From positions 1 through 64,000 of IMG/VR virus record IMGVR_UViG_3300027793_000052: a stretch of 64,000 nucleotides of DNA, one strand, 5' to 3'. This document shows, piece by piece, positions 6,264 to 54,598 of the stretch (the stretch's first letter is position 1; each line of letters starts with the position of its first letter). The translations under genes and the position numbers were made by a program. The notes beneath the pieces were generated by a model. The model made no database searches and had not been told where the DNA came from. It saw only the letters and a list, made by a program, of their open reading frames with translations.

Positions 6264-8063
6264 ATGAGACATTTAATCAAGAAAATATTAAAAGAAGACA
6301 TCTTTCAAATGGATAGATTAAGGCAATTGGAAGAAGGTGACTTGTTCATCATCACAAAAGTTAATCAAAATCTAGAAGATTGTGATCCAGATGCTCTTAG
6401 TGTTCTAAACCCACTTATCGGTAAAGTTTGTAAAGTTATAACCACAGATTGGGATGTTAATTTATATGACGGTATGTGTGAAGAACATTATGGTTGGGGT
6501 GCTTATATAATGTCAGAAGATATGGTTGGTGGCCACGATTTATACGAAAAGAATGGTGAATGTAAAAAGGATAAATGTTATTGGGTTAATGACTACTATA
6601 TAGATTATGATATAATAGATGATGTAAATACTGATGAATTTTTTACACAACTAGACGAACAAGAAGAAGATTTTGGATGGATGGATGATATTATAGATAT
6701 ATCTATAAAAATAGGTGATGTTTTTTATATAGTAGATTATAATTACGGTTATGACATGCAACCTATAAATTATAGACCAAATGTAGTAAGATATATTTTT
6801 TATGTTACAGATATTTTTGAAGAAGGCGGTAAACTTCATTTAAATTACAAATATTGTGAACCTGTAAATGTCACATATAACCCAAAAGACTATATTAAAT
6901 CCAAATGTCGTTCCACGCAAGATGAGGTTATTGAATATGAAAGAGCTTTAGAGTTGGTAGATAAACAATATTGGCGATTTATGGGTAATAACAATATGAG
7001 TAATAATATAAACGAACAAGAAGAAGATTTTGGTTGGGCTGAAGAATCCATCTCAGGTGATTTAAATTTGGGTAAATATTTTGAAAATTCTGATATTTGT
7101 TTTGATGATGAAGTTAATGTTGATAACAACTGTAAAATTACCGTAACAAAAGATAGTTTTGTTTTTAAACTAAATTATAGTTGGTGGTTGAATAAATTTG
7201 GTGAAGACAATTGGATGTTGGATAGACTTATCAGATATGGAAGTATGGGATATGACAGTTATTATGTTGATTATGAGTTGGATGATGAGGAGTTTAATTA
7301 TATTTATTATATGATTAATGAAGAAAATAGATATAAACTAGCTGATTGTTTAAGTGTATTAAATGAAGATGTAAGTGAAAATGATTTAAAAAATAATCTA
7401 TATGATGTTTTTGAAAATTTTAATGGTATCTTACCGGTAGAAGGAATGGCCTCAGATGTTGTTTATGAACTATCAAGAGCTTTAGAAAAAAATCGAAATC
7501 AACAAATAAATTTGGAGTTTGAAGATTTAATGTCAAAGACTGTCGCTAAATTTGAACATGTTGGAGGTTGGAAAGAAGACTACATTTTAATAAAAATACC
7601 AAAAGAATTGGTTTTAGAAGCTTTAGAGCAAAATAAGGATGAAAATTTAACTGATATTGTGAAAAAATACAGTTACGTTTTTGATATAAATTGGGATGAT
7701 TTTTATTATGGTACTTTTGATTTAAGTGGTTCTGAGGATCAAATTAACGATATTATGGCCGATTATTTGGATAAATTAATTGATATATTAAATAATGATG
7801 ATACGATACAGACATTAAATAATTTTACATCTTCATTAAAAAAATTAGGTTTTAAAAAAGAAAATAATAAATGGTATAAAACAATTAAAAAAGATAATTT
7901 AGATTATGTTTTTATTGTTAGTGATATAAATGGTGAAGACATGAATTTAATTCTAACTATAACCGTTTTTTATGATACACAAACCAAATATAAAAATTAT
8001 AAATATAAAATAAGTTTTGACGAGTTGGGTTATTACATTAATAATTATATTTTAGACATATAA
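6264..8063 (+). CDS. Modular protein with MRHLIKKILKE leader and two EQEEDFGW junctions
   Basis: Leader plus repeated junction motif. Confidence 0.7.
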   Translation: MRHLIKKILKEDIFQMDRLRQLEEGDLFIITKVNQNLEDCDPDALSVLNPLIGKVCKVITTDWDVNLYDGMCEEHYGWGAYIMSEDMVGGHDLYEKNGECKKDKCYWVNDYYIDYDIIDDVNTDEFFTQLDEQEEDFGWMDDIIDISIKIGDVFYIVDYNYGYDMQPINYRPNVVRYIFYVTDIFEEGGKLHLNYKYCEPVNVTYNPKDYIKSKCRSTQDEVIEYERALELVDKQYWRFMGNNNMSNNINEQEEDFGWAEESISGDLNLGKYFENSDICFDDEVNVDNNCKITVTKDSFVFKLNYSWWLNKFGEDNWMLDRLIRYGSMGYDSYYVDYELDDEEFNYIYYMINEENRYKLADCLSVLNEDVSENDLKNNLYDVFENFNGILPVEGMASDVVYELSRALEKNRNQQINLEFEDLMSKTVAKFEHVGGWKEDYILIKIPKELVLEALEQNKDENLTDIVKKYSYVFDINWDDFYYGTFDLSGSEDQINDIMADYLDKLIDILNNDDTIQTLNNFTSSLKKLGFKKENNKWYKTIKKDNLDYVFIVSDINGEDMNLILTITVFYDTQTKYKNYKYKISFDELGYYINNYILDI

Positions 8064-8488
8064 TGAAAAATTTAATTAAAAAGATATTAAAAGAAAACGA
8101 AGAAGATTTTGGTTGGGCCGAAAATATTATAAGTTCTGATGATTTATTTATAAAAAGAGGGGATAATTATATTATAGATATGTGTAAAGATATGGTTGAT
8201 CCCAATTTGTTTAAAAAAAAATTTTACGAATTTTATGGTGAAAAAATAGTTGATGATTTAACTTCAAGAATGGATATTAACATCTTTAACAACCCCAACA
8301 TTGATGGTTATCTCAGAGAAAAAAAACCATTTCAAATATTAGTCGAATATGATGGAATAAAAATAAGTAGGACAGGATGGAATCCTTGTTATAGTGACTA
8401 TCAAGGTGAAAAATCCAAATTTACCAAAAAATTTCCTAAATTAAAATCTTTTACACCTTCAGACTTTCTATCGCTTATAATGGTTTAA
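8063..8488 (+). CDS. Single-module protein with MKNLIKKILKENEEDFGW leader
   Basis: Same motif family. Confidence 0.7.
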   Translation: MKNLIKKILKENEEDFGWAENIISSDDLFIKRGDNYIIDMCKDMVDPNLFKKKFYEFYGEKIVDDLTSRMDINIFNNPNIDGYLREKKPFQILVEYDGIKISRTGWNPCYSDYQGEKSKFTKKFPKLKSFTPSDFLSLIMV

Positions 8489-8614
8489 ATTTTTTAACAA
8501 ACTATTGATACTAATTTACTGTTTGTTTTTTATTGGTTATATTTTAATTGTAGGTAACAAAAAATAATACATTACGTATTAAAATGTAGATATTTATTAT
8601 GAAAGGGTGTATCA

Positions 8615-10249
8615 GTGAAAATAAAATTATCCATATTATTTTTTTTATTCAGTTTAATCAATTCGGTTAAGTCACAAGTATCTACATGGTATACATTTTC
8701 TGAAACGGTTGGTACTTATACGGCCATAACAGGTGGTACTCAATTAGTTACCACAACTGCCGGTGCTATAACATATGATACTGACGGTAATAATATCGTT
8801 CTTCCTACCACATCAAGATTTGTCGTAAATGGTATTATCATTACAAATGTAAATATGACTGCGGATGGTTCACTATGGTGTAATCCAGTTACACCGACAT
8901 CTGGTTTTGGTACTACGGGTCCATTACAATCAGGTCAAGATGCGGCTGGTATAATATCAGTTATGGGAATGGATTTACGTAGTACTGCATTAGCTACACA
9001 AGTTTATGAAAGAAGATGGCAAGATGTGGGGACTGAAGTTGTATTTCAATGGCAGAATTGTGCGAGATATCTACAAAGTGGTACGGAAAGATTTTCATTT
9101 CAAATTAGAATAAACAAAACAAATAATCAGATTAGAATGGTATATGGTAATATGACAACCATAGCCAACAGTACCACTTATCAACCACAAGTTGGAATAC
9201 GAGGTCTTACCAATGCTGATTACATAGCCAGACGATTAACTAATTCAGTACCCGATGCATCTCCTAATTGGGGCGCACCTAATGGGACGACTAACGCCAC
9301 TACAAACGCACATACAGTTAGGTTTACATCTAATGGTTCTTGTTTTCCTGTTTCAGGATTAACATTTATATGGTCATATAGCGGTCCTTTATTCAATAAC
9401 GATTTGTGTGAGAATGCAACTCTTGTTACATTACCATATAATAGTGGAGTTGTAACAACGATAGGTTCAAGTACAGATGTTCCGAATGTCGCATCACCCT
9501 GTGACGATTATATTACTCAATCAAATAACTTATGGTATAGAGTAGTTGGTACGGGTAATGATATGACTTTTAATACATGTAACGCCTCTACTAATTTTGA
9601 TTCTGAAATAAGAGTTTATACAGGTGATTGTTCTTCATTAAATAGTATGGTTGAAGTTGTATGTAGTGATGATGATCCAAATTGTACTTCAGGTGGTGTG
9701 TTAGATCCTTCCGTTACGTGGTGTTCATCATTAGGTGTTAATTATTTTATATCTGTCGGATATTACACAGTTACAAGTACATTAAGTACTGGTAATTACG
9801 TATTAAGTGGTGTAGAAGGAGGTTCTTGTTCATCACTACCAGTAGAACTAATTCATTTTTCCGGTAAAGGATTTGAACATTATAATTTATTAAGGTGGAA
9901 AACCGCCACAGAAATAAATAATGACCATTTCACACTTGAAAGAAGTTTAGATGGAATTAGATTTCAAGAAATACAACAAATTGATGGTATGGGTAATTCT
10001 AATGTAATTCAAGAATACTCGACACGTGATTTTGAACTAAATACAGGGTTAATATATTACAGACTTATACAAACAGATTATGATGGTACACGTACCTATT
10101 CAGATATAATTGTAATTAATAGAGACCCTTACAAATCACTTAAGGTTGTTAGAATTACAAATGTATTAGGTCAAGACATAAATGAATGGAGTCCAGGTAT
10201 TAAACTCTATCATTATAGTGATGGTAGTATTGAAAAGAGAATAGAATAA
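8615..10249 (+). CDS. Secreted beta-rich protein with T9SS-type C-terminal region
   Basis: GTG start, signal peptide, LPVELIHF...WKTATEINNDHFTLERS...YYRLIQTDYDG and terminal NVLGQ..G..YSDG..EK typical of Bacteroidota T9SS cargo. Confidence 0.7.
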   Translation: MKIKLSILFFLFSLINSVKSQVSTWYTFSETVGTYTAITGGTQLVTTTAGAITYDTDGNNIVLPTTSRFVVNGIIITNVNMTADGSLWCNPVTPTSGFGTTGPLQSGQDAAGIISVMGMDLRSTALATQVYERRWQDVGTEVVFQWQNCARYLQSGTERFSFQIRINKTNNQIRMVYGNMTTIANSTTYQPQVGIRGLTNADYIARRLTNSVPDASPNWGAPNGTTNATTNAHTVRFTSNGSCFPVSGLTFIWSYSGPLFNNDLCENATLVTLPYNSGVVTTIGSSTDVPNVASPCDDYITQSNNLWYRVVGTGNDMTFNTCNASTNFDSEIRVYTGDCSSLNSMVEVVCSDDDPNCTSGGVLDPSVTWCSSLGVNYFISVGYYTVTSTLSTGNYVLSGVEGGSCSSLPVELIHFSGKGFEHYNLLRWKTATEINNDHFTLERSLDGIRFQEIQQIDGMGNSNVIQEYSTRDFELNTGLIYYRLIQTDYDGTRTYSDIIVINRDPYKSLKVVRITNVLGQDINEWSPGIKLYHYSDGSIEKRIE

Positions 10250-10289
10250 TTATGTTTACGTTGTTGTTTTTATTCTTTATATTTTAACT

Positions 10290-11033
10290 ATGGAAAATAG
10301 TGAGGATATACGTAAGTTTATAAACAGAGAAATTAAGGCAAATTCAATTTTTATCATCAAACAAATAGATAAAAAAGTTGCTTATGAATTTGTTAGGGTT
10401 TACCATTATTTGGGTGATGCTAAGTTCTTTGCTAAGTTTTCCTTTGGTTTATACCATAAAGAAACCGATGAATTATTAGGGATTACCGCCTTCTCAAACC
10501 CACAAGGTAATGTGGCTTTAAAAGGTTGGTTCGGATTACCTAATACAGACCAAACAGTATTAGAACTTAGTAGACTATGTGTTAAACCATACTTAAACGG
10601 AACCAACGCAACATCTTATTTATTGGGTAACAGTATAAAACTTCTTAAGAAAGAAGGGGTTAGAGCTGTTATAACATTAGCAGATGACAGTAGACACAAT
10701 GGTAGTATATACCAAGTATGTAATTTCAAATACTACGGTCTAACAGATAAAAAATCAGACTTCTTTCATTTGAACGATAAAGGCGAATGGAAAGTCAATC
10801 CAAGAGGACCCACAAAAGATAAAAACGGTGTATGGATTAATAGAACACAAAAACACAGATATGCCTACATCATAGACGAAAACCTAAAATGTCTATACGA
10901 ACAACTTTCATATCCTAAAAAAGACGATACAAAACAATATGATTGTTGTGCTGGTACTAAAATTGTAAAAGATAAACGCTTCAATATTGACTATCCGTGC
11001 CCCAAATGTACACTTTCTGTATTGGTCGAGTGA
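10290..11033 (+). CDS. Mom-like (GNAT-fold) DNA-modification protein
   Basis: HYLG, ELSRLC, LGNSIKLL, AVITLADD, HNGSIYQVCNFKYYG pattern. Confidence 0.65.
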   Translation: MENSEDIRKFINREIKANSIFIIKQIDKKVAYEFVRVYHYLGDAKFFAKFSFGLYHKETDELLGITAFSNPQGNVALKGWFGLPNTDQTVLELSRLCVKPYLNGTNATSYLLGNSIKLLKKEGVRAVITLADDSRHNGSIYQVCNFKYYGLTDKKSDFFHLNDKGEWKVNPRGPTKDKNGVWINRTQKHRYAYIIDENLKCLYEQLSYPKKDDTKQYDCCAGTKIVKDKRFNIDYPCPKCTLSVLVE

Positions 11034-11046
11034 TATTTATTAATAT

Positions 11047-11262
11047 ATGAATATCCATAAATTTATAAGAAGACATGATTTCATAAGTGGTAAACCATTT
11101 TATTCATTGTCAATGATTGAGGTTGTACCGAGAATTATATTTGATTTTGTACCAAACCGAATACCAACAAGATATTCAACAACAATGATTGATAGTAGGT
11201 ATTATTCTACGATAACATATAATAACCCAATGCCAATGGTCAACGGTACGGTACTATTTTAA
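11047..11262 (+). CDS. Hypothetical protein
   Basis: ORF track; ATATTTAT upstream. Confidence 0.45.
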   Translation: MNIHKFIRRHDFISGKPFYSLSMIEVVPRIIFDFVPNRIPTRYSTTMIDSRYYSTITYNNPMPMVNGTVLF

Positions 11263-11816
11263 TGATAACCAAATCTTTACCAATATTTTCTTTTATCAAT
11301 CCATCATTTAAATGGAGTTGTGTTCAATCTCGTATTGTAGTTGGTGAAACTAGGGCTATAAGAGCTATATGGACACCAGAACTCGCTCAAGATTTACAGG
11401 CTTTCCACAATATAGATGCTGAAGCTGAATTAACAGCTTTATTGACGGAAAATCTTAGACAAGAAATTGATACACAAATATTAAACGATTTACGTGTACG
11501 TGGTTGGGATAATTTATTTGATGTTAACAGAGGTTTAATTAATAACAGACCTGTAAATGATTTTGATAATATACAGTTACCTTTAATTAGACAAGTATCT
11601 GCAAGAACATTAGGTATGGATTTAGTAGGGGTACAATCATTGGAACTACCTGATGGGTTAATGAATTACCTAGATTATAATTATAGAACTTTACCTAATG
11701 AGGAAGGTTGGTACACAAACGATACTTGGGAATCTATATTCATTAATATGTATTTAAAACCACATAAATTTTTACCACCGAAACGTAGAAGTAGAAGGGA
11801 TATAAGAAATTTTTAA
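11262..11816 (+). CDS. Short protein built from T4 gp23-like major capsid segments
   Basis: WTPELAQDLQAFHNIDAEAELTALL..EID and LPLIRQV..DLVGVQSLELPDGLMNYLDY. Confidence 0.7.
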   Translation: MITKSLPIFSFINPSFKWSCVQSRIVVGETRAIRAIWTPELAQDLQAFHNIDAEAELTALLTENLRQEIDTQILNDLRVRGWDNLFDVNRGLINNRPVNDFDNIQLPLIRQVSARTLGMDLVGVQSLELPDGLMNYLDYNYRTLPNEEGWYTNDTWESIFINMYLKPHKFLPPKRRSRRDIRNF

Positions 11817-11852
11817 AATTTCATGGATAAATATTTATATGAAACATAGATT

Positions 11853-12524
11853 ATGAGAAACTTAATTAAAAAAATCATAAAAGAAGAAATAATTAATGAA
11901 TTTAATTTAAAAGAAACATTTACAAGACCATTGAAAAATATTTCTAAATTAGATGATTTCACCTACATTGGTTATGAAGACAATGTTAAGGCCATATATA
12001 ATTTCAGATTAGAAACTGTGGATGATAATATACCGAAAAGGTATTTTGGGGATTTGATTGATTATTTTTATGAATTTTCATGGAAATTCGACATGGAAAT
12101 GGATGTAGAATTAAAAAACGATTGGTCTTGGGTTAAAGCCACAACAACATCTATAAAAATAATAGATGATTTTATTAGAACAATAAACCCAAAACTTATA
12201 AAATTTAGTGGTAGAAGTGAAGGTACCAAATCTATGTATAATAACGACATTTTTGTTGATAAATTAAGATCAATATTTGGTCAAACACATAATATTATAT
12301 TAGATGATGACGATCCTGAAAATAGAAAAATCTACATATCAAAAAGAGAATACAATATTTTAAGTGAAGATACCATCCGTAAAAACATGGATTGTATGAC
12401 TTATGAAGAGGCTTATAGAATTGTGAAATTCCCTAAAAAAAACCAATTTAAAGGTATAGTAAGGAATAAATTTAAAAAAGAACAAATACAAAGAATATTA
12501 AACAAAGAAAAATATTTATTTTAA
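11853..12524 (+). CDS. Hypothetical protein with MRNLIKKIIKE leader
   Basis: Leader motif; ATATTTAT at 11832. Confidence 0.65.
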   Translation: MRNLIKKIIKEEIINEFNLKETFTRPLKNISKLDDFTYIGYEDNVKAIYNFRLETVDDNIPKRYFGDLIDYFYEFSWKFDMEMDVELKNDWSWVKATTTSIKIIDDFIRTINPKLIKFSGRSEGTKSMYNNDIFVDKLRSIFGQTHNIILDDDDPENRKIYISKREYNILSEDTIRKNMDCMTYEEAYRIVKFPKKNQFKGIVRNKFKKEQIQRILNKEKYLF

Positions 12525-12531
12525 AAAAAAC

Positions 12532-12578
12532 TTGACAAGTAATAAACTTTTACTATCTTTGTATCATATTTATTAACA
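12532..12578 (+). promoter_or_regulatory. Composite promoter of tRNA operon 2
   Basis: 47 nt identical to 17274-17320; TTGACA, TATCTTTG, ATATTTAT. Confidence 0.75.
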
Positions 12579-12595
12579 GTAACAGAATTAAACAA

Positions 12596-12688
12596 ATGAA
12601 GACTTTAACAAACATATTATTCGTGATGACACTAACGGTGTTATTTCAGTTTACACAAACTGAACTCGGGTTCTTATGTCTAAGTTAA
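12596..12688 (+). CDS. Leader peptide 2 (MKTLTNILFVMTLTVLFQFTQTELGFLCLS)
   Basis: 22 of 29 non-start codons are Q/F/M/T/V/L, the amino acids of the downstream tRNAs. Confidence 0.8.
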   Translation: MKTLTNILFVMTLTVLFQFTQTELGFLCLS

Positions 12689-12713
12689 TCATTTAATATA
12701 TTAACAAATTTAG

Positions 12714-12748
12714 AAGAACCCGAGAAAAACTCTCGGGTTTTTTTATTT
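12714..12748 (+). terminator. Attenuator terminator, tRNA operon 2
   Basis: AACCCGAGA/TCTCGGGTT plus T run; left arm also pairs perfectly (11 bp) with 12665-12675. Confidence 0.85.
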
Positions 12749-12753
12749 TATAT

Positions 12754-12827
12754 TATCCCGTCGCCTAATTGGCATGGCACTAGATTTTGACTCTAGCATA
12801 GTACAGGTTCGAACCCTGTCGGGATAA
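12754..12827 (+). tRNA. tRNA-Gln(UUG)
   Basis: CTAGA-TTTTGAC-TCTAG; TATCCCG/CGGGATA. Confidence 0.88.
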
Positions 12828-12857
12828 CCGAAGAAGTTATTTGACATATTATATTTT

Positions 12858-12930
12858 GTGGAAGTTACCAAGTTGGTCAAGGTGTTGGTCTGAAAAACCA
12901 ATTATATGAGTTCGATTCTCATCTTCCACA
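12858..12930 (+). tRNA. tRNA-Phe(GAA)
   Basis: TTGGT-CTGAAAA-ACCAA; GTGGAAG/CTTCCAC. Confidence 0.88.
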
Positions 12931-13061
12931 CAACAAGCCGTAGGTATGAATAAGTATATATATATATATATAATATTATTTTAATAACTTATTTAATCAT
13001 TAATTAAAATAATCATCTAAAGTTCGATAATTTTTATCGATATATAATGATATTTATTACT

Positions 13062-13895
13062 ATGAAATGGTATAAAAAAGATATTGAAACATTGATTGAA
13101 TTAATTCGTCAAGGTAACACCTATGATGAAATAGGTGTTATAATGAAAAGAAGTAGATCTTCTATTAAAGCTAAATTATTAAAATTGGGTGAGACATATA
13201 GAAAGTATTCTGAAAACAATTATTATGAAAAGGTTAATTGTAAAAATTGTGGTATAGAATTTAAATCTTTAATGTCTAATAAACAAAAATTTTGTAACCA
13301 TACATGTGCTGCAAGTTATAATAATGTAATTAGAGGTAAAAGAAGTCAAGAAACAAAAAATAAAATAAGTAAATCATTAAAAAGTAAAAAAAAGGAGAAA
13401 TATGATTTAAATCCTAAAAAATGTATGAAATGTGGTGAACATATACCATATAGTAAATGGTGTAATTATAGAAAAAATTGTGACGAATGTAACATTATTA
13501 TTCGTAAAAATATGGGTAGGATTTTAGGTCAAAAAACCTCACAAACCAAAATAAAAAGATCGAAAGACGAGATAAATTTATATGAGTTATGTAAGATGAG
13601 TTTTAACGATGTTGAACATAATAAAATAATAAGTTCTGGATGGGATGCTGATATTGTTATAAATGATTATAAAATACTTATACTATGGAATGGTCCTTGG
13701 CATTATAAACAGTTACCATTAAAAAACCATAGTTTAAATCAAGTACAAACTAGAGATAAAATAAAACAAAAATTGTTTGAAAGTTTAGGTTGGAGAGTTA
13801 TAATATTTGAAGATAGATATTACACACCATATACAGCTTTTGATTATTTAAAAAATATAATTCGGGATATATCTCCCCACTCTCATAAGGTGTAG
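13062..13895 (+). mobile_element. Putative free-standing homing endonuclease (Cys-rich DNA-binding repeats plus Vsr/PD-(D/E)xK-like C-terminus)
   Basis: CKNC...FCNHTC, WDADIV..ILILWNGPWHY, RDKIK..GWRV; inserted inside a tRNA cluster. Confidence 0.6.
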
Positions 13896-13941
13896 AAAGA
13901 GTAATTGGCAACATGTGAGTTCAACTCTCACTATCCCGACA
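13862..13941 (+). ncRNA. Atypical tRNA-like RNA with CAU anticodon loop and no normal D-arm
   Basis: 8-bp TCGGGATA/TATCCCGA stem, CTCATAA loop, GTGAG-TTCAACT-CTCAC T-arm; only ~7 nt between acceptor and anticodon arm. Confidence 0.55.
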
Positions 13942-13985
13942 AAATAATGGTTCGATCTGTTCAAATCAGATATACGGTACTATAT

Positions 13986-14059
13986 TCCGGTGATACTCTG
14001 AAGGTAAGGGTGCTCGCCTTGTAAGCGAGATTTAGTCGGTTCGATCCCGACCACCGGAT
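13986..14059 (+). tRNA. tRNA-Thr(UGU)
   Basis: CTCGC-CTTGTAA-GCGAG; TCCGGTG/CACCGGA. Confidence 0.88.
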
Positions 14060-14064
14060 CAAAA

Positions 14065-14135
14065 GCCCTGATGACGTAATGGTAGCGTACTAATTTTACA
14101 TGTTAGCAGCAAAGGTTCAATTCCTTTTCAGGGCA
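14065..14135 (+). tRNA. tRNA-Val(UAC)
   Basis: CTAAT-TTTACAT-GTTAG; GCCCTGA/TCAGGGC. Confidence 0.8.
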
Positions 14136-14141
14136 CAAAAA

Positions 14142-14218
14142 GCCTTCGTGACGTAATTGGTAACCGTGTTAGTTTTAGAAACTAAATTTTGTGAGTTCAA
14201 ATCTCACCGAAGGCACCA
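14142..14218 (+). tRNA. tRNA-Leu(UAG), short variable loop, CCA encoded
   Basis: TTAGT-TTTAGAA-ACTAA; GCCTTCG/CGAAGGC. Confidence 0.85.
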
Positions 14219-19041: not shown

Positions 19042-19508
19042 AAGAAAAAATTATGAGCAAGGTGTTGAAAAAGATAATAAAAGAATCGTTATTGTTAGAA
19101 TCTATAGATATTTTTGATATAAATAACATACCTTGTGAGTTTAATATACATACTGAAAATAATAATAACATAACAGTAATATTCACACCAAATTCAGAAG
19201 ACTTTTACCAATTAAGTATTGAAATAAAAGATGACGGTTGTTATTATGTTATATTCGGTGTTATTATTGATGATGTAGTTAGAACATCTTTGACTTTAAA
19301 TAGTGATTACAGACTTAAAGTTTTATCTACTGTGTTCTCTTTAATTAAATACTATACAGATAAGTATAACGTTGAATGTTTGGAAATGGATATAGATGAT
19401 GAAATGAGATTAAAATTATATAATCTTTATTTTAGTAAACATTTTAAAAATTTCCAAGTAGATAAGTTAGGTAACAAAGTGAGATTAGTAAAAAATGATA
19501 AACTTTAA
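19038..19508 (+). CDS. Hypothetical protein with KVLKKIIKE leader
   Basis: ORF track; leader motif. Confidence 0.55.
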   Translation: MKEKIMSKVLKKIIKESLLLESIDIFDINNIPCEFNIHTENNNNITVIFTPNSEDFYQLSIEIKDDGCYYVIFGVIIDDVVRTSLTLNSDYRLKVLSTVFSLIKYYTDKYNVECLEMDIDDEMRLKLYNLYFSKHFKNFQVDKLGNKVRLVKNDKL

Positions 19509-37415: not shown

Positions 37416-38078
37416 ATGAAAAAAGTCATAAGATTAAATGAAAATGATATTGAAAAATTGGTTAAAAAAATCATCAGAGAAGGTGAAACCAGTTACATGA
37501 ATGATCACGAAGCTAATACATATATGTTTTGGCAAAACCTTGAAACCATTAAACATGCCGCAGAGGAAATTTTGGAGATGGACAGGGAAAAAATAAATGA
37601 AATTTTAGCAGATGGTCATGCTTGGGCCATGGACCATATTGCGACTTCAGCTGATGATGTTGAAGAAGTATATCATTTTTTGGAAGGTCGTGAAGATGAT
37701 TATGAAAAACATGAACACAAGGAAGAAGAAGAGGAGGAGGAAGAATATGGGCAATATATGGAATCCATCAAAGGTAGAATAATTCATGCTGACGAATTTG
37801 GCTTCACAGAGTTATTACCAATAAATGAAGGTAAAGGTAAAGGGGCTTGTGCAAACAGAGATTTAAATAAACCTTGGTTAACACCTGATGGACCTAAAAA
37901 ACGTTCTGTTTGTGTTAAAAACGCTTCAGGAAATGTGGTTAAAGTTAATTTTGGTGACCCTAATATGAGAATTAAAAAATCAAACCCTGAAAGAAGAAAA
38001 TCTTTTAGAGCTAGACATAAATGTGAGAATCCAGGACCAAAGTGGCGTGCACGCTATTGGTCGTGTAAGTTTTGGTGA
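37416..38078 (+). CDS. Conserved phage protein with leader motif
   Basis: LVKKIIRE; VNFGDPNMRIKKSNPERRKSFRARHKC..RYWSC. Confidence 0.6.
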   Translation: MKKVIRLNENDIEKLVKKIIREGETSYMNDHEANTYMFWQNLETIKHAAEEILEMDREKINEILADGHAWAMDHIATSADDVEEVYHFLEGREDDYEKHEHKEEEEEEEEYGQYMESIKGRIIHADEFGFTELLPINEGKGKGACANRDLNKPWLTPDGPKKRSVCVKNASGNVVKVNFGDPNMRIKKSNPERRKSFRARHKCENPGPKWRARYWSCKFW

Positions 38079-39024: not shown

Positions 39025-39471
39025 ATGAAACATATAATCAAAGAAGTTCTCTTACAAGAGGCTAAAAAAAAGAAATCGAATGACCGTTGTACACGTATTG
39101 CTAAACGTAAATACGACGTATGGCCATCTGCTTACGCATCAGGTGCTGTAGTTAAGTGCCGTCAAGGTAAAATTTGGAAAAATGAAGATTTGGAATATGA
39201 TTTGGATACTTTGATGGAAAATACTGAGTATGAAGATTTACTTAGTGAAGAACCTAAGAGAGATTTTTCAAAAGAAAAAGAAAAGGGGTTACACGGATGG
39301 TTTGAACGTAGAGGTGGAACAGGTAAGGCTAAAGGATGGGTAGATTGTAACACTTGTCGTGACGGTAAATGTAAACCGTGCGGTAGACAAGAGGGTGAGA
39401 AAAGAAAGAAACCTAGATGTAGGCCAACACCATCACAATGTAAGGGGTATAAAAGACCGGATCAAAGATAA
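39025..39471 (+). CDS. Cys/basic-rich phage protein
   Basis: WPSAYASGAVVKCR, GLHGWF, WVDC, PRCRP. Confidence 0.6.
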   Translation: MKHIIKEVLLQEAKKKKSNDRCTRIAKRKYDVWPSAYASGAVVKCRQGKIWKNEDLEYDLDTLMENTEYEDLLSEEPKRDFSKEKEKGLHGWFERRGGTGKAKGWVDCNTCRDGKCKPCGRQEGEKRKKPRCRPTPSQCKGYKRPDQR

Positions 39472-40197
39472 ATGAAAAATTTAATTCGTAAAATATTAAA
39501 AGAAGAATTAAAGACTAAAAAATATAAGTCTTTAAAACCTGGCGTTGCTGAACTACATGGTAAAAAGATTGTTGTGGTTTTAGATGAGAACGATAGAATA
39601 GTTGCACATGGACCTTACATAACTGACACTACAGATAAAAGGTATATATGTCATATTGCTGAAGGTTTAATAGAAGAACTATTCGATGAAGGTGAAATAC
39701 AAATGGAAAGTTTGTTAAAAGAACTAGATACAAAAGATTTTACTAATATTCAAAAAATAAACTATTGTGACAACATTAGAGAATCCGAAGAAATAGATTC
39801 TGAAAATGTTTTATTAAGTGGTCATAAAGGTCACACAGGTAAAGTGTTTGTACATAGAAATTTAAATAAACCACCTTATTGGACAATAAAGGCTAGAAGT
39901 GGTGAAAACGCTGGGATTGTTATTGGTTATGATAAAACAGTTTGTTTAACAAATGTTGTATTCTCAGTTAGTGAAAAATCACGTCAAAGGGTTTTAGTGA
40001 CAAAACAAAAAAACGTACATGCTGGGGTGGTTGGGTATTTAAAAGAAAATTGTTCTACGAACACAAGCGGTTGGATTCCTGTCACATATAATCCTTACAA
40101 ATATAGTACTTTTATTAGATTAGATAATGGTCAACCTATATATGAAGCTAGTGAGGCCATATTAAAAAATGAAAAAGAAATTTGGGTAAAAATTTAA
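39472..40197 (+). CDS. Hypothetical protein with MKNLIRKILKE leader
   Basis: Leader; C-terminal HRNLN..KNVHAGVVG..VTYNPYKY domain. Confidence 0.6.
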   Translation: MKNLIRKILKEELKTKKYKSLKPGVAELHGKKIVVVLDENDRIVAHGPYITDTTDKRYICHIAEGLIEELFDEGEIQMESLLKELDTKDFTNIQKINYCDNIRESEEIDSENVLLSGHKGHTGKVFVHRNLNKPPYWTIKARSGENAGIVIGYDKTVCLTNVVFSVSEKSRQRVLVTKQKNVHAGVVGYLKENCSTNTSGWIPVTYNPYKYSTFIRLDNGQPIYEASEAILKNEKEIWVKI

Positions 40198-45819: not shown

Positions 45820-47282
45820 CTTTGTTCTCTTATTCTATCATCCACAAGTTTTGGTGGGGGTAGTATTTTAAGCATTGTATTTTTTTCATTTCTAGCTGTT
45901 TTTTTATCGTTACTTAAAAAAACAAACTTATCTGTTAATCTTACCACTGTTACATTAGTACCTGGACCCCACTTTCTACCCCTTTCTTTATACACAACAG
46001 TATCACCAATAGATAAATTTTTGGTGGATTGATTTATTTTGGTACCTTCTTCACCCATTATTTTATAAAAATTTAAAACTAATCTATACGCAATTTCTTC
46101 TTTTGCCTCACTATTTAAATCCTTAGTTACCCCATCTTCATCTAGTGATTTAATAATTTCTGATAATTTAACAATTTGATTTTTATCTTTTAAATTATTT
46201 AAAAAATAATAACCAAAATCATCTTGACTAAAATAATCCGACATATCTTCAAAGTTAGAGGTCAAAAGTAAAGAAATATCTAATGTTAAAAAAGGTATAT
46301 CGTAACCGTTATAGTTATTAAAATAACTATTCATCGGTAAACCCCTATAATTTATTATTATATCATTTAAAAAAGGAACATCTTGAATGACACCATTTAA
46401 CATTTTAGGGAAAATATGTATGTAACCACGGTTAGTTGTAATACCTGCGACATAAGGTTTTAATTTATCAAGAAAGGTATTAATTTTATTTTTTTTATTT
46501 TTTACAATATCACCTACATATTTTTTACAAGCCTCGATACCATCTTTAGGTAAGATAGTTATCATAAAAGAAGATTCCATTCTTTGGTCCTCCATCGAAT
46601 ACCATTCCCAATCAATTGGTTTTTCAAAAAAAGGAAACTTTATATGGACGGCTATTTTGTAATTTCCAACTTCCTGACCTCTAGTTGGGTGTAATTCTTT
46701 TTTATCTAACCAAAATATCAAAGAACCTTCTTTAGAGTATCTATTCCAATAATTTGAATTAGATGTTGACACACACCAACTTGAGTGTATTCCGTATTTA
46801 CATGAAGCCTCATGTGTTAAAGGTGAAATAAGTAACCATCTATCATCCTCCCAAATTTTAACCCTATTAGCTGTGGCCGGTTTTAATTCTTCAAAGTACT
46901 CACACATTGGTTTTATCCAAAGGTGTGAAACATAAGAGTTAATATCTTTTGGTGCTTTTTTAATCCTATCAAATTCTTTTTTTTGTTCTTCACTTGGATT
47001 TTGGAAGTTTTGTTCACTATATATTGCGGCAACAGTTTTGTCATTTAAACGATTAGTATTTGTATGAAAACATTTAACCGCATCAATTATTTCATTACCA
47101 CTTTCCGGTGAAATAATAATATTTTTAACCATCCACTCAAGGTATTTGTTATTACCTGAGGGGTCGTTTCCAGATAAAGAACGTATGGTTTCTTCATCTA
47201 CATTATTATATTTTTTAATGACATCCTCTAAACGCCCTTCATTTATAATCTGCTCTAATATAATGTATTTAATATTTGTCAT
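45795..47282 (-). CDS. DPSGNNKYL-family protein
   Basis: DPSGNNKYLEW and PLTHEASCKYG..WCV shared with 50324 and 55049 ORFs. Confidence 0.6.
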   Translation of the reverse strand: MTNIKYIILEQIINEGRLEDVIKKYNNVDEETIRSLSGNDPSGNNKYLEWMVKNIIISPESGNEIIDAVKCFHTNTNRLNDKTVAAIYSEQNFQNPSEEQKKEFDRIKKAPKDINSYVSHLWIKPMCEYFEELKPATANRVKIWEDDRWLLISPLTHEASCKYGIHSSWCVSTSNSNYWNRYSKEGSLIFWLDKKELHPTRGQEVGNYKIAVHIKFPFFEKPIDWEWYSMEDQRMESSFMITILPKDGIEACKKYVGDIVKNKKNKINTFLDKLKPYVAGITTNRGYIHIFPKMLNGVIQDVPFLNDIIINYRGLPMNSYFNNYNGYDIPFLTLDISLLLTSNFEDMSDYFSQDDFGYYFLNNLKDKNQIVKLSEIIKSLDEDGVTKDLNSEAKEEIAYRLVLNFYKIMGEEGTKINQSTKNLSIGDTVVYKERGRKWGPGTNVTVVRLTDKFVFLSNDKKTARNEKNTMLKILPPPKLVDDRIREQRWIRKYII

Positions 47283-48141: not shown

Positions 48142-48367
48142 ACCTTTCGTTTATGGGTCTCCCACAACCAAGGTTTAAAAAGGGATCTTAAAAAATGGAC
48201 TGTAGACACCTTTCGTTTATGGGTCTCCCACAACAAACTTGCGGTGGAGTGGGGAGTTAAATTTAGCTGTAGACACCTTTCGTTTATGGGTCTCCCACAA
48301 CAGTTCATCAACCGTACCGTCAATTGGTGAAGCTGTAGACACCTTTCGTTTATGGGTCTCCCACAAC
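48142..48367. CRISPR. CRISPR-like mini-array B: 3 full and 1 truncated 36-nt repeats, spacers of 30/31/30 nt
   Basis: GCTGTAGACACCTTTCGTTTATGGGTCTCCCACAAC at 48199, 48266, 48332 and partial at 48142; unique spacers; repeat can fold into a hairpin; no cas gene seen. Confidence 0.65.
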
Positions 48368-48675
48368 ATATTAACACATATTTTCTGAAATTCTGGGTAA
48401 GAAACCCCCATTTTTTGACATTTTTTCCAGATTTTACCATAATCAACATATAAAACCGGTTTCTGATCACCAGTATCTATATTATCTAAAAATAAAAAAT
48501 CCCCATTTTTATCAATATATTTTGTCCATCCTGGTTGTTTTTTTGATCCTACCAAGTTACATTCTGATAATTTATCATAAATAAATTTTTCTGCCTCAGA
48601 TAATTCTGGAATATCATCAAACCAATCTAAATTTTCTATGGATTCTTTTAATATTTTTTTAATTAAATTCCTCAT
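48217..48675 (-). CDS. Leader-bearing protein reading in frame into array B
   Basis: MRNLIKKILKE; LWETHKRKVSTA occurs twice, encoded by the repeats. Confidence 0.65.
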   Translation of the reverse strand: MRNLIKKILKESIENLDWFDDIPELSEAEKFIYDKLSECNLVGSKKQPGWTKYIDKNGDFLFLDNIDTGDQKPVLYVDYGKIWKKCQKMGVSYPEFQKICVNMLWETHKRKVSTASPIDGTVDELLWETHKRKVSTAKFNSPLHRKFVVGDP

Positions 48676-48732
48676 ATCATATAAATATTTTGTATATTTG
48701 TAAAAATTAAAATAAATAGACCTCTCTAAGAG

Positions 48733-51527: not shown

Positions 51528-51582
51528 TTCTTTATGAAACCCCTTTACCGAGGGGTTTTTTATTTTAAGATGATATTTATTA

Positions 51583-52779
51583 ATGATGAATACTATCCGT
51601 AAAATTATTAAAGAACAATTACTCACTGAAAAGGCTGGAATATCGGAAATTGTTAGAAAATGGGCTACAATATTAAAAAATGAAGTAGACGAAAATTTAA
51701 AAATTCATAGAGAAGAACAACACAAAAAATATTCCCAAAAAACAAAGGGTATTTCATACCCATCCATGAGTGATATTTTTGATGTAAATTTAGATAAGCC
51801 TGTAAACCCTGAAGATGATCCTTTTTATTGGGAGGATGACACTAGTAAAGGAAAAAATTATTATAAGAAAGGTTATGATGATTATATGAGAGAGGATTAT
51901 AGGTCTAGACAGAGTTACAGTCAAATGTACGAACCTTTAGCCGAGGTTGTGGTATACGGTGAGGATTACCCCAAAGAATACGAAGAATTTTCAGTAGATG
52001 TTTGGGTTCTAACAAATAGTAATCGTATTGAGTATGACCATTATGAATCTGGTTATGATGAAGATGGTTATTATATTGTTTACCTTAATATACCTTTAGC
52101 TGCCATGAGTATGTCCACTTTTATTCATGAAATTAAACATGCTTACGATGATTGGAATAGGATGCGAACCGGTGGTAAACCAATAAGAGATAGTTGGGAA
52201 ATTAAAAATATATACACAAAAGATTTTGAAAAGTTAATACTAGGTGCTTCGGTAAACTTTCCACAATTGGGTCCTATAATTCGTAATTATTATATGGGTT
52301 CTAAATTGGAAACACCTGCTTACTTGGAAAACGAATATGACAACGCAATGGTAAACTATCAAGATATTGGTAAAAAATTGATGAATTTTAAAGCATCTAC
52401 TTTTATGACCAAGGAAGGTGAACCGGCTAGAGGTTTGGGGGATGAGTTTAAAAAACTACAAAGTTACGATATACCTTTATTCAAAAAATTTGATAATGTT
52501 TTAGATTTTTTAAGGTATACAGAAAAATATTTCAACCAAAGAGGTGAAGACATTTTTAGACGAGTTAACAAAATGAGATACGTTCACGGTTTACCGGCTA
52601 AACAAGAACCTAAAAAATGGGAACCAAGTACAAAAACACAAAAAACAACAAGTACGAAGGGTACACAACAAGACCTTTTTAGTTCAAGTGAAGATTTTGA
52701 TGATTGGAAATATTCTAGAGAAAGGGGTTGGTATTATGCTGGTAAAGGTGGTGAAGATTTTAATGATTATTATTACTAA
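51583..52779 (+). CDS. HExxH putative metallopeptidase with leader motif
   Basis: MNTIRKIIKE; FIHEIKHAYDDW. Confidence 0.62.
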   Translation: MMNTIRKIIKEQLLTEKAGISEIVRKWATILKNEVDENLKIHREEQHKKYSQKTKGISYPSMSDIFDVNLDKPVNPEDDPFYWEDDTSKGKNYYKKGYDDYMREDYRSRQSYSQMYEPLAEVVVYGEDYPKEYEEFSVDVWVLTNSNRIEYDHYESGYDEDGYYIVYLNIPLAAMSMSTFIHEIKHAYDDWNRMRTGGKPIRDSWEIKNIYTKDFEKLILGASVNFPQLGPIIRNYYMGSKLETPAYLENEYDNAMVNYQDIGKKLMNFKASTFMTKEGEPARGLGDEFKKLQSYDIPLFKKFDNVLDFLRYTEKYFNQRGEDIFRRVNKMRYVHGLPAKQEPKKWEPSTKTQKTTSTKGTQQDLFSSSEDFDDWKYSRERGWYYAGKGGEDFNDYYY

Positions 52780-52789: not shown

Positions 52790-53419
52790 ATGAACATTAG
52801 AAAAATAATAAAAGAAACTTTATTATTGGAAATAGGTGAAGCCAATGTAGAACCATTCATGTGGAAGTTGGCTAACAAGACAGACGATTTTTATATCTAT
52901 GAATTTAAAACGGCTGGAGGTTCAAACTTAAACATAAATGTTACGTTTTATAAATTAAGTCCCAAGATGATGTCTAACTTAGTTGATAGAGACAGAAGAT
53001 TACCAGAGGAGGCAATTAATTTAATTAAAAAAAATCCTACGGGTTATTGGGATGTTGAGTTTACTGTTGAAGAAGACAGAGGTAGTGCACTTGATAATCC
53101 TTATCTTACAATTAGTAAATCAGAGTTTAAATCAGATAAAATAGAGTTATTTAAAATATTATCCACCTTAAACAAAATTGTTAATGATTTTTTGTATAAA
53201 GAAAAAAATGTCAGAGGACTTACTTTTAAACCAGTAAATAGAAAAAGGGGGATGTTGTTTTTAACTTATTTTAAAAAACTTTTACCTGATGCACAAAAAA
53301 TGGTAACACATTATGGTGTTCATATTATTGTTTTGGATAAAAATTTAAATAAAGTGGATACAAGATTAAAAAAACAATCTTATCTGGATAGAAAAACGTT
53401 TGGTGATGATGAATATTAA
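52790..53419 (+). CDS. Hypothetical protein with MNIRKIIKE leader
   Basis: Leader motif. Confidence 0.6.
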   Translation: MNIRKIIKETLLLEIGEANVEPFMWKLANKTDDFYIYEFKTAGGSNLNINVTFYKLSPKMMSNLVDRDRRLPEEAINLIKKNPTGYWDVEFTVEEDRGSALDNPYLTISKSEFKSDKIELFKILSTLNKIVNDFLYKEKNVRGLTFKPVNRKRGMLFLTYFKKLLPDAQKMVTHYGVHIIVLDKNLNKVDTRLKKQSYLDRKTFGDDEY

Positions 53420-54191
53420 AAAAATAATAAAAAATATTCTAACAGAAAGTGCTGGTATCTCTTTTGAAGTAAGAGCTTGGTCTGATATTATTTATAACCT
53501 GTTGATAAATAACTCTGGTGATGAATTAATAGTTGATGGTCAAGAATATCCAGAAATATTTGAAAAATTTTCTGTTGATTATTTTGTTATTGATTTTAAT
53601 AAAAGATTAAATGGTTATTTAAATGAAACTTCTGGTTATGATAAAGACGGTAATTATGTGGTTCATATTTTAATTTTAGACAAACTTAAAGGTCACCCTT
53701 ATTTAAAAACCGTTTTAAATCACGAAATCAAACACGCATACCAAGATTGGCAAAGAATAAGTAAAGGTTATCCAAACATTAATTCAACAAAGGAATCCAT
53801 AAACATGTATACTCGTGATTTTATCAAAGTTTTAAATAATGAAACCCAAGTTAGTCAGATTTTTAAAGATGTATTAAAAGGTTATTACTTATTGTCAGAC
53901 TTAGAGTTAGACGCTTTTATGGAAAATGTTTATGACCGAGACATGATGAATGATTACAGAGGAATGGTTTCGGAGTTAAAAAATTTATATGTGTTCAAAG
54001 ACCTTCGTCATATAAGCCCAAAAATTTTAAAAAACGATTGGTCTCTTTTGATAAACATGGACATACCTTTTTTAAAAAAATATAAAAATTACAATTCATT
54101 TTTGAAAAAATCTAACGAATATTTTAAAACAAGAAGTGAGGAAATAATTCGTAAATTAAATAAAATGGAATATGTTCACAGAGGAAGATAA
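53409..54191 (+). CDS. HExxH putative metallopeptidase, paralog of 51583-52779
   Basis: LTESAGISFEVRAW versus LTEKAGISEIVRKW; LNHEIKHAYQDW. Confidence 0.62.
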   Translation: MNIKKIIKNILTESAGISFEVRAWSDIIYNLLINNSGDELIVDGQEYPEIFEKFSVDYFVIDFNKRLNGYLNETSGYDKDGNYVVHILILDKLKGHPYLKTVLNHEIKHAYQDWQRISKGYPNINSTKESINMYTRDFIKVLNNETQVSQIFKDVLKGYYLLSDLELDAFMENVYDRDMMNDYRGMVSELKNLYVFKDLRHISPKILKNDWSLLINMDIPFLKKYKNYNSFLKKSNEYFKTRSEEIIRKLNKMEYVHRGR

Positions 54192-54301
54192 ACATCCCGA
54201 TATTATTTTATTAGAAAATAAATTAATTAAAGTTGTTGGTGAAGAAGAGTATGAAAGAGCTGCTATATTGAAAAAGTGGATTGACTTGTTAGAAGAATAC
54301 C

Positions 54302-54598
54302 ATGAAAAGAAAAATATTAAGAAAAATAATAAAAGAAGAACTTCTTAGAGAACAAATTGTTTGTCACTTAGTAGCACCCAAAGGTAAAGGTAAGGGTGGT
54401 TACATGAGTAATGAAGAGGCTTTGGATTTAATAGATAAAATACAAATAGGGGGTCGAAAAGAAATTCATGACCCACAACTTTGGGCAAAATTTGTTGAGA
54501 CATTATCCGAATTTAGACAAAACATTAAAAATATTGACACCAACAACGATACTGTAGACACTTATTTACACAAATTGAGAGATTTGATTGGTTGTTAG
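54302..54598 (+). CDS. Small protein with ILRKIIKE leader
   Basis: Leader motif. Confidence 0.55.
   Translation: MKRKILRKIIKEELLREQIVCHLVAPKGKGKGGYMSNEEALDLIDKIQIGGRKEIHDPQLWAKFVETLSEFRQNIKNIDTNNDTVDTYLHKLRDLIGC

What the first reader, a model, noticed from the sequence alone, without database searches (positions are those of the whole stretch)
6264..54598. MKNLIKKILKE-type N-terminal leader on at least ten unrelated proteins: candidate capsid-targeting and cleavage signal
Seen: variants at 6264, 8063, 11853, 19053, 37416, 39472, 48675(-), 51583, 52790, 53409 and 54302, many with ATATTTAT just upstream. Established: T4 internal proteins carry a ~10-aa capsid-targeting sequence removed by prohead protease gp21 after (I/L)-x-E. 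Inference: the leader ending I/L-K-E directs packaging of a large injected-protein arsenal.
Basis: partly seen in the sequence, partly recalled or inferred. Interest (0 to 1): 0.65.

Follow-up and report, generated by a model that had tools for sequence, protein, structure and literature searches.

The report
Shared capsid-targeting-like leader on phage proteins
About 27 otherwise unrelated late proteins of an uncultured 318-kb T4-like freshwater phage begin with the same 11-residue peptide (M-x-x-LIKKILKE), which most likely addresses them to the assembling head and is then cut off, as in phage T4 but on a much larger scale; no proteomic evidence exists yet.

Summary
All 11 reported genes start with the motif, I add one more at 39025, and the whole 318-kb genome has about 27 carriers. 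The strict motif lies in the first 12 residues in 19 of 24 occurrences (p about 7e-21). Beyond the leader only 2 carrier pairs are homologous.

The phage is T4-like:
- It has a gp21-family (S77) prohead protease with its catalytic motifs intact.
- Its gp23-like capsid protein has an invariant L-[IL]-x-E site at T4's maturation position.
- It has a gp22-like scaffold.

ATATTTAT is the late-promoter box, and 23 of 27 leader genes sit in operons headed by it. Small genes beside the protease in many relatives carry leader variants.

The identical leader heads at least 101 distinct proteins on IMG/VR contigs of one clade of roughly 300-kb phages. It is absent from cellular genomes and from cultured relatives, and no paper in the searched library contains the peptide.

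Best reading (confidence 0.58): a T4-type capsid-targeting and cleavage propeptide with a new sequence and many more cargoes. Cargoes include a CCA-adding enzyme and an HExxH protein. Packaging, cleavage and injection are all inferred. An unexplained uniformity of codons 7-9 and a linked DF-x-W motif remain.

The parts
6264..8063 (+). Leader-bearing gene, 599 aa, MRHLIKKILKE; cargo of unknown function
   Evidence: lies in an operon behind the late box at 6034-6041
8063..8488 (+). Leader-bearing gene, 141 aa, MKNLIKKILKE followed by the DFGW motif; near-orphan cargo
   Evidence: (only 2 homologs)
11853..12524 (+). Leader-bearing gene, 223 aa, MRNLIKKIIKE; paralog at genome 224619
   Evidence: late box at 11831-11838
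19053..19508 (+). Leader-bearing gene, 151 aa from this start (a longer frame starts at 19038), MSKVLKKIIKE-SLLLE; weak DUF6934 hit
37416..38078 (+). Gene with the long leader form, MKKVIRLNENDIEKLVKKIIRE, 220 aa. The same form heads the gene just after the prohead protease (genome 138865)
   Evidence: late box at 37391-37398
39025..39471 (+).
39472..40197 (+). Leader-bearing gene, 241 aa, MKNLIRKILKE plus a C-terminal Phage_L5_gp82 domain
   Evidence: (E 1.9e-31)
48217..48675 (-). Leader-bearing gene, 152 aa, MRNLIKKILKE followed by NLDW
   Evidence: late box on the minus strand at 48681-48688, 5 nt from the ATG
51583..52779 (+). Leader-bearing gene, 398 aa, MMNTIRKIIKEQLLTE then AGIS; invariant HExxH; first gene of a four-gene leader operon
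   Evidence: late box at 51573-51580
52790..53419 (+). Leader-bearing gene, 209 aa, MNIRKIIKETLLLE
53409..54191 (+). Leader-bearing gene, 260 aa, MNIKKIIKNILTE then SAGIS; paralog of 51583
54302..54598 (+). Leader-bearing gene, 98 aa, MKRKILRKIIKEELLRE
6034..6041 (+). ATATTTAT late-promoter-like box heading the operon 6069/6264/8063
51573..51580 (+). ATATTTAT late-promoter-like box 2 nt before the ATG of 51583

Best explanation
The leader is a T4-type capsid-targeting propeptide with a new sequence. It is a basic amphipathic helix (hydrophobic L4, I5, I8, L9; net charge usually +3). Attached to the N-terminus of late-expressed proteins, it gives them affinity for the scaffolding core of the prohead. 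The gp21-family prohead protease then removes it, cutting after the Glu of the aliphatic-x-Glu ending (I-L-K-E). In some families the cut would be at a second L-x-E about five residues further on. The freed cargoes stay in the head and enter the host with the DNA. Shown here: the motif, its position, its phage specificity, the unrelatedness of the cargoes, the late-promoter context, the T4-type protease, and matching sites in the capsid and scaffold proteins. Inferred: binding to the core (perhaps to the scaffold's hyper-acidic segment), cleavage, retention in virions, and injection.
For: (1) The genome has a Peptidase_S77 protease (E 7e-31) that keeps the GELNHP and SRG motifs when aligned with T4 gp21 structure 5JBL. 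It also has Portal_T4 and a gp23-like capsid protein. (2) The capsid propeptide aligns with T4 gp23. The site L-[IL]-x-E, followed by a variable linker, is invariant in all the distinct clade capsid sequences with an intact N-terminus, about 36. It also persists in cultured relatives. The scaffold N-terminus, ALLE-AQEIDA, mirrors T4 gp22's LIAE-AQKIDA. (3) The leader has the length and ending of T4 propeptides: gp24 is MAKINELLRE, and IPII/IPIII are MKTYQEFIAE. In T4, 10-19-residue CTS propeptides target diverse proteins to the core and are removed after Glu (PMC9026906, PMC5694885, PMC3012670). (4) 23 of 27 leader genes lie in operons headed by the ATATTTAT box, against 188 of 377 other genes (p 5e-4). 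None has the TAnnTTTG box. The ATATTTAT box precedes the portal, protease, scaffold, sheath and tube genes. (5) In relatives, the small genes between protease and scaffold, where T4 keeps its core genes, carry leader variants. (6) Amino-acid entropy jumps right after E11/E12. In the AF2 model of the 51583 protein the leader is a separate low-confidence helix that breaks at the conserved E16/AGIS boundary. (7) K-to-R and L-to-I swaps through multi-nucleotide codon changes show selection on the peptide. (8) The leader is phage-specific: more than 116 viral stretches against 37 chance-like hits in 596 Gb of cellular genomes.
Against: There are no proteomic or biochemical data. The complex prediction for protease plus leader gave no verdict. 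The mature cargoes are mostly acidic (median pI 5.5), unlike T4 internal proteins. One cargo is a CCA-adding enzyme, which would also be useful in the cytoplasm. Aliphatic-x-Glu is a short, common motif. Codons 7-9 (AAA-ATA-TTA) are far more uniform than background codon usage predicts (ATA 90 of 101 against 37 expected), so some constraint acts on the nucleic acid too. A second linked motif, DF-x-W, lies downstream of the proposed cut and is unexplained.
Confidence: 0.58

Rival explanations
1. The conserved start is a nucleic-acid signal. Many late boxes end only 2-8 nt before the ATG, so late mRNAs may be nearly leaderless. The A/U-rich first 33 nt would then serve initiation or bind a phage translational regulator, and the peptide would be a by-product.
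For: The box-to-ATG spacing peaks at 5-8 nt. Codons 7-9 are much more uniform than codon usage predicts. The sequence is extremely A/T-rich.
Against: K is replaced by R through CGT or AGA, and L by I, while non-conservative changes are rare. The fixed residue order is not needed for A/U richness. Most box-headed genes, including the portal, protease, scaffold, sheath and tube genes, lack the leader. In-frame internal copies exist in the 80025 and 148836 proteins. Leader genes inside operons, without their own box, keep the leader.
Confidence: 0.12
2. The leader is an uncleaved amphipathic interaction helix. It recruits late proteins to some other shared partner, such as a chaperone, a membrane, or another assembly or replication site, rather than to the prohead.
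For: It has amphipathic basic character. The linked DF-x-W motif suggests a longer linear binding module. Enzymatic cargoes such as the CCA-adding enzyme could act in the cytoplasm.
Against: No candidate partner is known. The ending matches the protease site type conserved in this phage's capsid and scaffold proteins. Leader variants sit on genes in the prohead-core position. Conservation stops sharply at the Glu.
Confidence: 0.17
3. The promoter-plus-leader unit is mainly a recombination cassette. Its DNA identity lets genes be shuffled or captured, as proposed for the T-even internal-protein locus, and the peptide itself has little function.
For: Codon uniformity. Identical 18-mers in the two leaders of the 80025 gene. 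Tandem arrays of leader genes in relatives. T4 IPII and IPIII have a CTS that is identical at DNA level.
Against: This does not explain the conservative amino-acid substitutions, the strict reading frame, or retention over a clade whose proteases differ by up to 48%. It is compatible with the best explanation rather than an alternative to it.
Confidence: 0.08
4. The motif is a chance or compositional artefact of an A/T-rich genome rich in K, I, L and E.
For: The genome is about 30% G+C.
Against: N-terminal concentration has p about 7e-21. Reversed-pattern controls give 0-3 hits per genome. There are no matches in two A/T-rich cultured relatives.
Confidence: 0.01

Closest known systems
Capsid targeting sequences (CTS) of phage T4 internal proteins IPI/IPII/IPIII, and the propeptides of gp24 and Alt
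   Same: A short N-terminal propeptide (10-19 residues in T4, 11 here) on otherwise unrelated proteins. It ends in aliphatic-x-Glu. The genome encodes a gp21-family protease, a gp22-like scaffold and a gp23-like capsid protein. Carrier genes lie in variable regions. The DNA of the leader is near-identical between copies (T4 IPII and IPIII).
   Different: The sequence is unrelated to MKTYQEFIAE; it is nearest to the end of the gp24 propeptide, LLRE. It is basic rather than neutral or acidic. There are about 27 carriers per genome against roughly 5 in T4. Cargoes reach 769 aa, are mostly acidic and include enzymes. Some carry a second L-x-E and a linked DF-x-W motif. Nothing has been shown experimentally.
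Propeptides of ejection and inner-body proteins in phiKZ-like giant phages (phiKZ, 201phi2-1, SPN3US)
   Same: Many head-internal proteins are processed after Glu by a diverged gp21-like protease. Redundant cleavage sites occur within propeptides. Paralogs share N-termini (SPN3US gp53 and gp54; PMC5694885).
   Different: Those propeptides are mostly longer than 100 residues, the motif is A/S/G-x-E, and there is no single leader shared by dozens of unrelated proteins. This phage is T4-like, not phiKZ-like.
Phage P1 Dar system (DarA/Hdf-dependent packaging of DarB, Ulx and others)
   Same: Head-internal anti-defence proteins are incorporated during assembly.
   Different: P1 uses an ordered protein-dependent pathway and does not have a T4-type head-assembly system. 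I did not compare it here; this rests on prior knowledge and the abstracts of PMC9024508 and PMC12810830.

Membership tests
T4-type capsid targeting sequence (CTS) propeptide | Short N-terminal segment (about 10-19 residues) at the very start of the protein | tested here: met
   11 residues in the canonical form and 14-22 in the variants. 19 of 24 strict motifs lie in the first 12 residues.
T4-type capsid targeting sequence (CTS) propeptide | Shared by proteins that are otherwise unrelated | tested here: met
   Only 2 homologous pairs among 23 carriers. The N-terminal cluster of 30 has 4 paralog links out of 109.
T4-type capsid targeting sequence (CTS) propeptide | Ends in the prohead-protease site (aliphatic-x-Glu) also used in the capsid and scaffold proteins of the same phage | tested here: met
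   The leader ends in I-[LI]-[KR]-E. The capsid protein has an invariant L-[IL]-x-E at the T4-equivalent place. The scaffold has ALLE-AQEIDA, matching T4 LIAE-AQKIDA. This is a sequence match only.
T4-type capsid targeting sequence (CTS) propeptide | Genome encodes a gp21-family (Peptidase_S77) prohead protease with catalytic residues | tested here: met
   PF03420, E 7e-31. GELNHP and SRG are conserved against 5JBL and T4 gp21.
T4-type capsid targeting sequence (CTS) propeptide | Carrier proteins are made late, together with head proteins | tested here: inconclusive
   23 of 27 lie in operons headed by the ATATTTAT box, which also precedes the portal, protease, scaffold, sheath and tube genes. 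Timing is inferred from the motif, not measured. RNA-library contigs show presence only.
T4-type capsid targeting sequence (CTS) propeptide | The leader is sufficient or necessary for incorporation into proheads | not testable with these tools
   Needs virion proteomics or reporter fusions. There is no cultured host or phage.
T4-type capsid targeting sequence (CTS) propeptide | The leader is removed by the protease in mature virions | not testable with these tools
   The complex prediction gave no verdict. Needs N-terminomics or an in vitro cleavage assay.
T4-type capsid targeting sequence (CTS) propeptide | Sequence similarity to the T4 CTS MKTYQEFIAE | tested here: not met
   The T4 sequences were read from NC_000866. 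There is no similarity beyond M-K at the start and aliphatic-x-E at the end.
T4 internal proteins (IPI/IPII/IPIII class) | Small, basic, DNA-associated mature proteins | tested here: not met
   Mature parts have median pI 5.5 (range 4.2-9.5) and sizes of 92-769 aa.
phiKZ/SPN3US-type ejection-protein propeptides | Long (over 100 aa) propeptides cut at A/S/G-x-E | tested here: not met
   The leader is 11-22 aa with an aliphatic residue at P3. The comparison data come from PMC5694885.
Sec/Tat/lipoprotein signal peptides | Hydrophobic core of at least 7 residues after a short basic N-region | tested here: not met
   The leader alternates K/R with I/L and ends in E, followed by acidic residues, with no hydrophobic run.

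The most novel reading that the evidence does not exclude
A whole clade of roughly 300-kb T4-like phages runs a plug-in cargo system. A late promoter plus an 11-codon leader, kept near-identical at both peptide and DNA level, converts any captured gene into a head-packaged, host-injected protein. This would give ejectomes of up to about 30 proteins per phage, including enzymes (a CCA-adding enzyme serving the phage's large tRNA set, and an HExxH metalloenzyme). The basic leader would dock on the scaffold's hyper-acidic LDLDL-rich segment.
Probability: 0.3. Interest if true: 0.75.

Novelty: new variant of a known kind. Interest (0 to 1): 0.6.

Why it matters
If correct, one short and easily recognised peptide would let the injected-protein repertoire of an abundant uncultured phage clade be read directly from sequence. 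That repertoire amounts to hundreds of diverse and mostly unknown proteins, which are likely early-acting host-takeover or anti-defence factors. It would also show that T4's CTS principle scales to dozens of cargoes, and it would provide a second, orthogonal packaging tag for phage-capsid protein delivery. The finding makes a testable prediction for viral-fraction metaproteomics: peptides that begin right after ...LKE.

Tried and rejected
- **Complex prediction.** The protease catalytic domain with the first 40 residues of the 8063 protein gave no verdict (score 0.21, mark 0.34). This is not evidence either way.
- **Family scans of the cargoes.** Pfam and PHROGs scans of about 30 leader proteins were mostly empty. 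The only hits were L5_gp82, PolyA_pol, and weak DUF6934, SprT and HMUD2 matches.
- **Other cargo searches.** The ESM Atlas features search for the 599-aa cargo gave only sub-threshold hypothetical clusters.
- **Fold of the 51583 cargo.** The AF2 model (pLDDT 78.8) found no significant match with Foldseek (best E 0.13). VIA-align gave Z of 5 or less, all generic helical hits. The HExxH 'metalloprotease' idea therefore rests on the motif alone.
- **Searches of GenBank phages.** tblastn with the 871-aa and 141-aa window proteins gave no match.
- **Cultured relatives.** The nearest ones (Microcystis phage Mel-JY01, Flavobacterium phage immuto) lack the motif entirely. The 484-kb LR756508 has at most one short variant. 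No experimental model is at hand.
- **Literature.** Full-text search for the peptide strings found 0 papers.
- **Host-type signal idea.** Rejected, because cellular genome hits are internal Met codons, tiny ORFs or F-for-L variants.
- **Fold of the 8063 protein.** Abandoned, because it has only 2 homologs.
- **RNA-run contigs.** They show that the operon is present in metatranscriptome libraries, but they cannot define transcript starts.
Full report
**What the window is.** The window is the first 64 kb of a 317,983-bp IMG/VR virus record that CheckV estimates as 96% complete. It has about 30% G+C. Runs holding it come from freshwater metagenomes and metatranscriptomes. It is a T4-like jumbo phage:
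- a Peptidase_S77 (gp21) prohead protease at genome 138056-138868 (E 7e-31), aligned to T4 gp21 structure 5JBL with GELNHP and SRG conserved;
- a T4-type portal (E 1e-74);
- a gp23-like capsid protein at 142300-144069;
- a scaffold whose N-terminus (…ALLE-AQEIDA) mirrors T4 gp22 (…LIAE-AQKIDA).

No close cultured relative exists. Capsid-protein identity is at most 43%, to uncultured huge phages, Microcystis phage Mel-JY01 and Flavobacterium phage immuto.

**The observation.**
- A six-frame scan of the window finds the loose motif 13 times. Nine are within 6 residues of a start Met.
- Genome-wide, 19 of 24 strict-motif occurrences are in the first 12 residues, where 5% is expected (p 6.5e-21).
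- A position matrix finds 30 hits, 25 of them N-terminal.
- An unbiased all-against-all comparison of the first 28 residues of all 404 ORFs gives one dominant cluster of 30 proteins. It has 109 links, only 4 of them between proteins that are homologous further on.
- Beyond the leader only 11853~224619 and 51583~53406 are similar.

There are three forms:
- Canonical: M-[KR]-x-L-I-[KR]-K-I-[LI]-[KR]-E.
- Short: MNIRKIIKE-xLLxE.
- Long: MKKVI[KR]L[NT]ENDIEKLVKKII[KR]E, seen at 37416 and 138865.

**Promoter context.** ATATTTAT is 21-fold enriched within 45 nt upstream of starts, and 80 genes have it.
- It precedes the portal, protease, scaffold/capsid operon, sheath, tube and tail-repeat genes, so I read it as the late promoter. 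That reading is an inference.
- 23 of 27 leader genes lie in operons headed by it, against 188 of 377 other genes (p 5e-4). No leader gene has the TAnnTTTG box that 51 other genes have.
- The box often ends only 2-8 nt before the ATG, which suggests nearly leaderless late mRNAs.

**Distribution.**
These give 101 dereplicated, very diverse ORFs, often in tandem arrays and often behind the same box.
- The contigs are CheckV fragments (10-76%) of genomes of roughly 300 kb. S77 proteases were found in 16 of 40 records, more often in the more complete ones.
- The protease has 417 relatives in IMG/VR. In head loci of the closer subclade, 83 of 913 ORFs start with a leader. In the sister subclade only a rare variant, LIKKLLRE-GLLxE, occurs.
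- Strict-motif copies per genome range from 2 to 12, with reversed-pattern controls at 0-3.
- In 596 Gb of cellular genomes there are 37 hits, all chance-like except one. That one is a Prochlorococcus single-cell genome contig whose matched stretch (6.5 kb) is 100% identical to an IMG/VR phage contig of the same length.
- The cultured relatives lack the motif. No paper contains the peptide.

**Link to head maturation.**
- The capsid propeptide is homologous to that of T4 gp23: LYENQ…LISE-TSTAGGG here, IFENQ…FLTE-AEIGG in T4.
- Across the distinct clade capsid sequences with an intact N-terminus (about 36), L-[IL]-x-E is invariant. It is followed by a length-variable linker and then the conserved FETVVFPIVRR core. 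The site also persists in Mel-JY01 and immuto.
- The protease of this lineage therefore very probably cuts after aliphatic-x-Glu, as T4 gp21 does (PMC9026906, PMC5694885).
- The leader ends in exactly that type of site, and it has the length of T4 propeptides (gp24 MAKINELLRE; IPII/III MKTYQEFIAE).
- In relatives, the small genes between protease and scaffold, the place of T4's core genes 67, 68 and 22, begin with the long or short leader form.
- In-frame internal copies occur in head-module protein 148836 and in the 80025 protein. The latter looks like a fusion of two different leader genes.

**Peptide or nucleic acid?**
- Amino-acid entropy is low through E11, intermediate at position 12 (E in 56 of 101) and high from position 13 on.
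- K-to-R changes use CGT, AGA and AGG, and L-to-I changes are frequent. Non-conservative changes are rare. This argues for selection on the peptide.
- However, in the 101 independent ORFs, where my pattern allowed every synonymous codon, codons 7-9 are much more uniform than background. AAA occurs 99 times out of 101, ATA 90 (37 expected) and TTA 87 (53 expected).
- This points to an extra nucleic-acid constraint or to concerted evolution and recombination of leaders. T4's IPII and IPIII CTS are likewise identical at DNA level. I leave this unexplained.

**Cargoes.**
- Most have no family.
- Exceptions are a 769-aa protein with a PolyA_pol/CCA-adding head domain next to the protease (E 2e-35), whose orthologs mostly keep the leader; a Phage_L5_gp82 domain protein at 39472; and a weak SprT-like hit on a neighbouring head-module gene (140170) whose N-terminus is only leader-like.
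- The 51583 family has 174 homologs, all 'hypothetical'. It has an invariant HExxH, and an N-terminal helix that always ends in L-[LI]-x-E followed by (A/V)AGISF.
- In its AF2 model (pLDDT 78.8) the leader is a separate low-confidence helix (residues 2-17) that breaks at that boundary. No fold match was found.
- The 8063 cargo is nearly an orphan.
- Mature parts are mostly acidic (median pI 5.5).
- A second motif, [DEN][FWY]-x-W at residues 12-17, follows 6 of 24 leaders here and 32 of 101 in IMG/VR. Only 1 of 379 non-leader proteins has it at that position. Its role is unknown.

**Mechanism proposed.** The basic amphipathic leader (net +3 in 13 of 24) docks late proteins onto the prohead core. 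The docking site may be the scaffold's hyper-acidic segment, which reaches net -25 per 40 residues with EEEELDLDL repeats; this is inference only. The S77 protease then cuts after the Glu, and the cargo stays in the head and is delivered with the DNA. My probabilities: about 0.6 for head targeting, about 0.5 for cleavage at E11 or the second L-x-E, and lower for an anti-defence 'arsenal' role.

**Limits.** The complex prediction gave no verdict. RNA-library contigs tile the 51583 operon in four independent metatranscriptomes, but they cannot show transcript starts and may include DNA. The reads call used 4,701 letters, and only the standard bacterial code was used.

**Verdict.** I class it as a new variant of a known kind: the T4 CTS principle with a new, clade-wide leader and a many-fold larger and more diverse set of carriers.

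Noticed in passing
window 45795-47282(-), 55049-56590; genome 89474, 99389, 123707: A second shared N-terminus, …LL-x-EGR-[LK]-EDV-x-KKYP…DPSGN, sits on four or five large late proteins (319-923 aa). Each is preceded by the ATATTTAT box. It links to the short leader form through IIKEQLIxEGR.
   Followed up: partly
window 11262-11816: A 184-aa ORF directly upstream of leader gene 11853 matches the Gp23 capsid family in two pieces in scrambled order (profile positions 143-196, then 2-48). It may be a capsid-protein fragment or a derived small protein.
   Followed up: no
window 2410-21688 and 30869-31262: The window holds at least 22 tRNA genes in several clusters and a full-length tmRNA (82 bits). 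Elsewhere the phage encodes a CCA-adding enzyme that carries the leader (genome 135696-138005, minus strand).
   Followed up: partly
window 3170-4780: A 536-aa protein has a TROVE (Ro60-like) domain (E 5e-9). No Y-RNA-like family reached the Rfam gathering score in the window.
   Followed up: partly
leader codons 7-9 in 101 IMG/VR ORFs and in this genome: The synonymous codons AAA-ATA-TTA are nearly fixed (ATA 90 of 101 against 37 expected), while neighbouring leader codons vary. The cause is unexplained: nucleic-acid constraint, gene conversion, or a specific decoding effect.
   Followed up: partly
genome 80025-80831: One ORF carries two leaders, at residue 1 and residue 145. Both use identical rare-codon 18-mers and both are followed by an [FW]-x-W motif, but the two halves are otherwise unrelated. 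It looks like a fusion of two leader genes.
   Followed up: partly
L242 (QCKH01000009.1) = L056 (IMGVR_UViG_2716884754_000003): A 63,985-bp contig of a clade member, carrying the leader, the late box and an S77 protease, is filed under a Prochlorococcus single-cell genome. This is a possible host clue for marine members, whereas this window's phage is from fresh water.
   Followed up: partly
genome-wide; e.g. window 48681-48688(-), 51573-51580: The ATATTTAT box often ends only 2-8 nt before the ATG, which implies nearly leaderless late mRNAs. On the coding strand the core TATTTATA is the reverse complement of T4's late promoter TATAAATA.
   Followed up: partly
genome 126549-129707: A 1052-aa late gene just upstream of the portal contains an intein splicing domain with a LAGLIDADG endonuclease. 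GIY-YIG-like homing endonuclease paralogs sit at window 38054-38959(-) and at genome 206343 and 265759.
   Followed up: no
genome 140787-142268: The gp22-like scaffold has an extreme acidic segment at about residues 55-140, with net charge down to -25 per 40 residues and EEEELDLDL repeats. Its C-terminal part contains LISE, the same site as in the capsid protein.
   Followed up: partly
window 19038-19508 and 19809-20081: Two nearby ORFs share the identical first nine residues, MKEKIMSKV. Only the first continues into the leader; the second continues into a hydrophobic segment.
   Followed up: no
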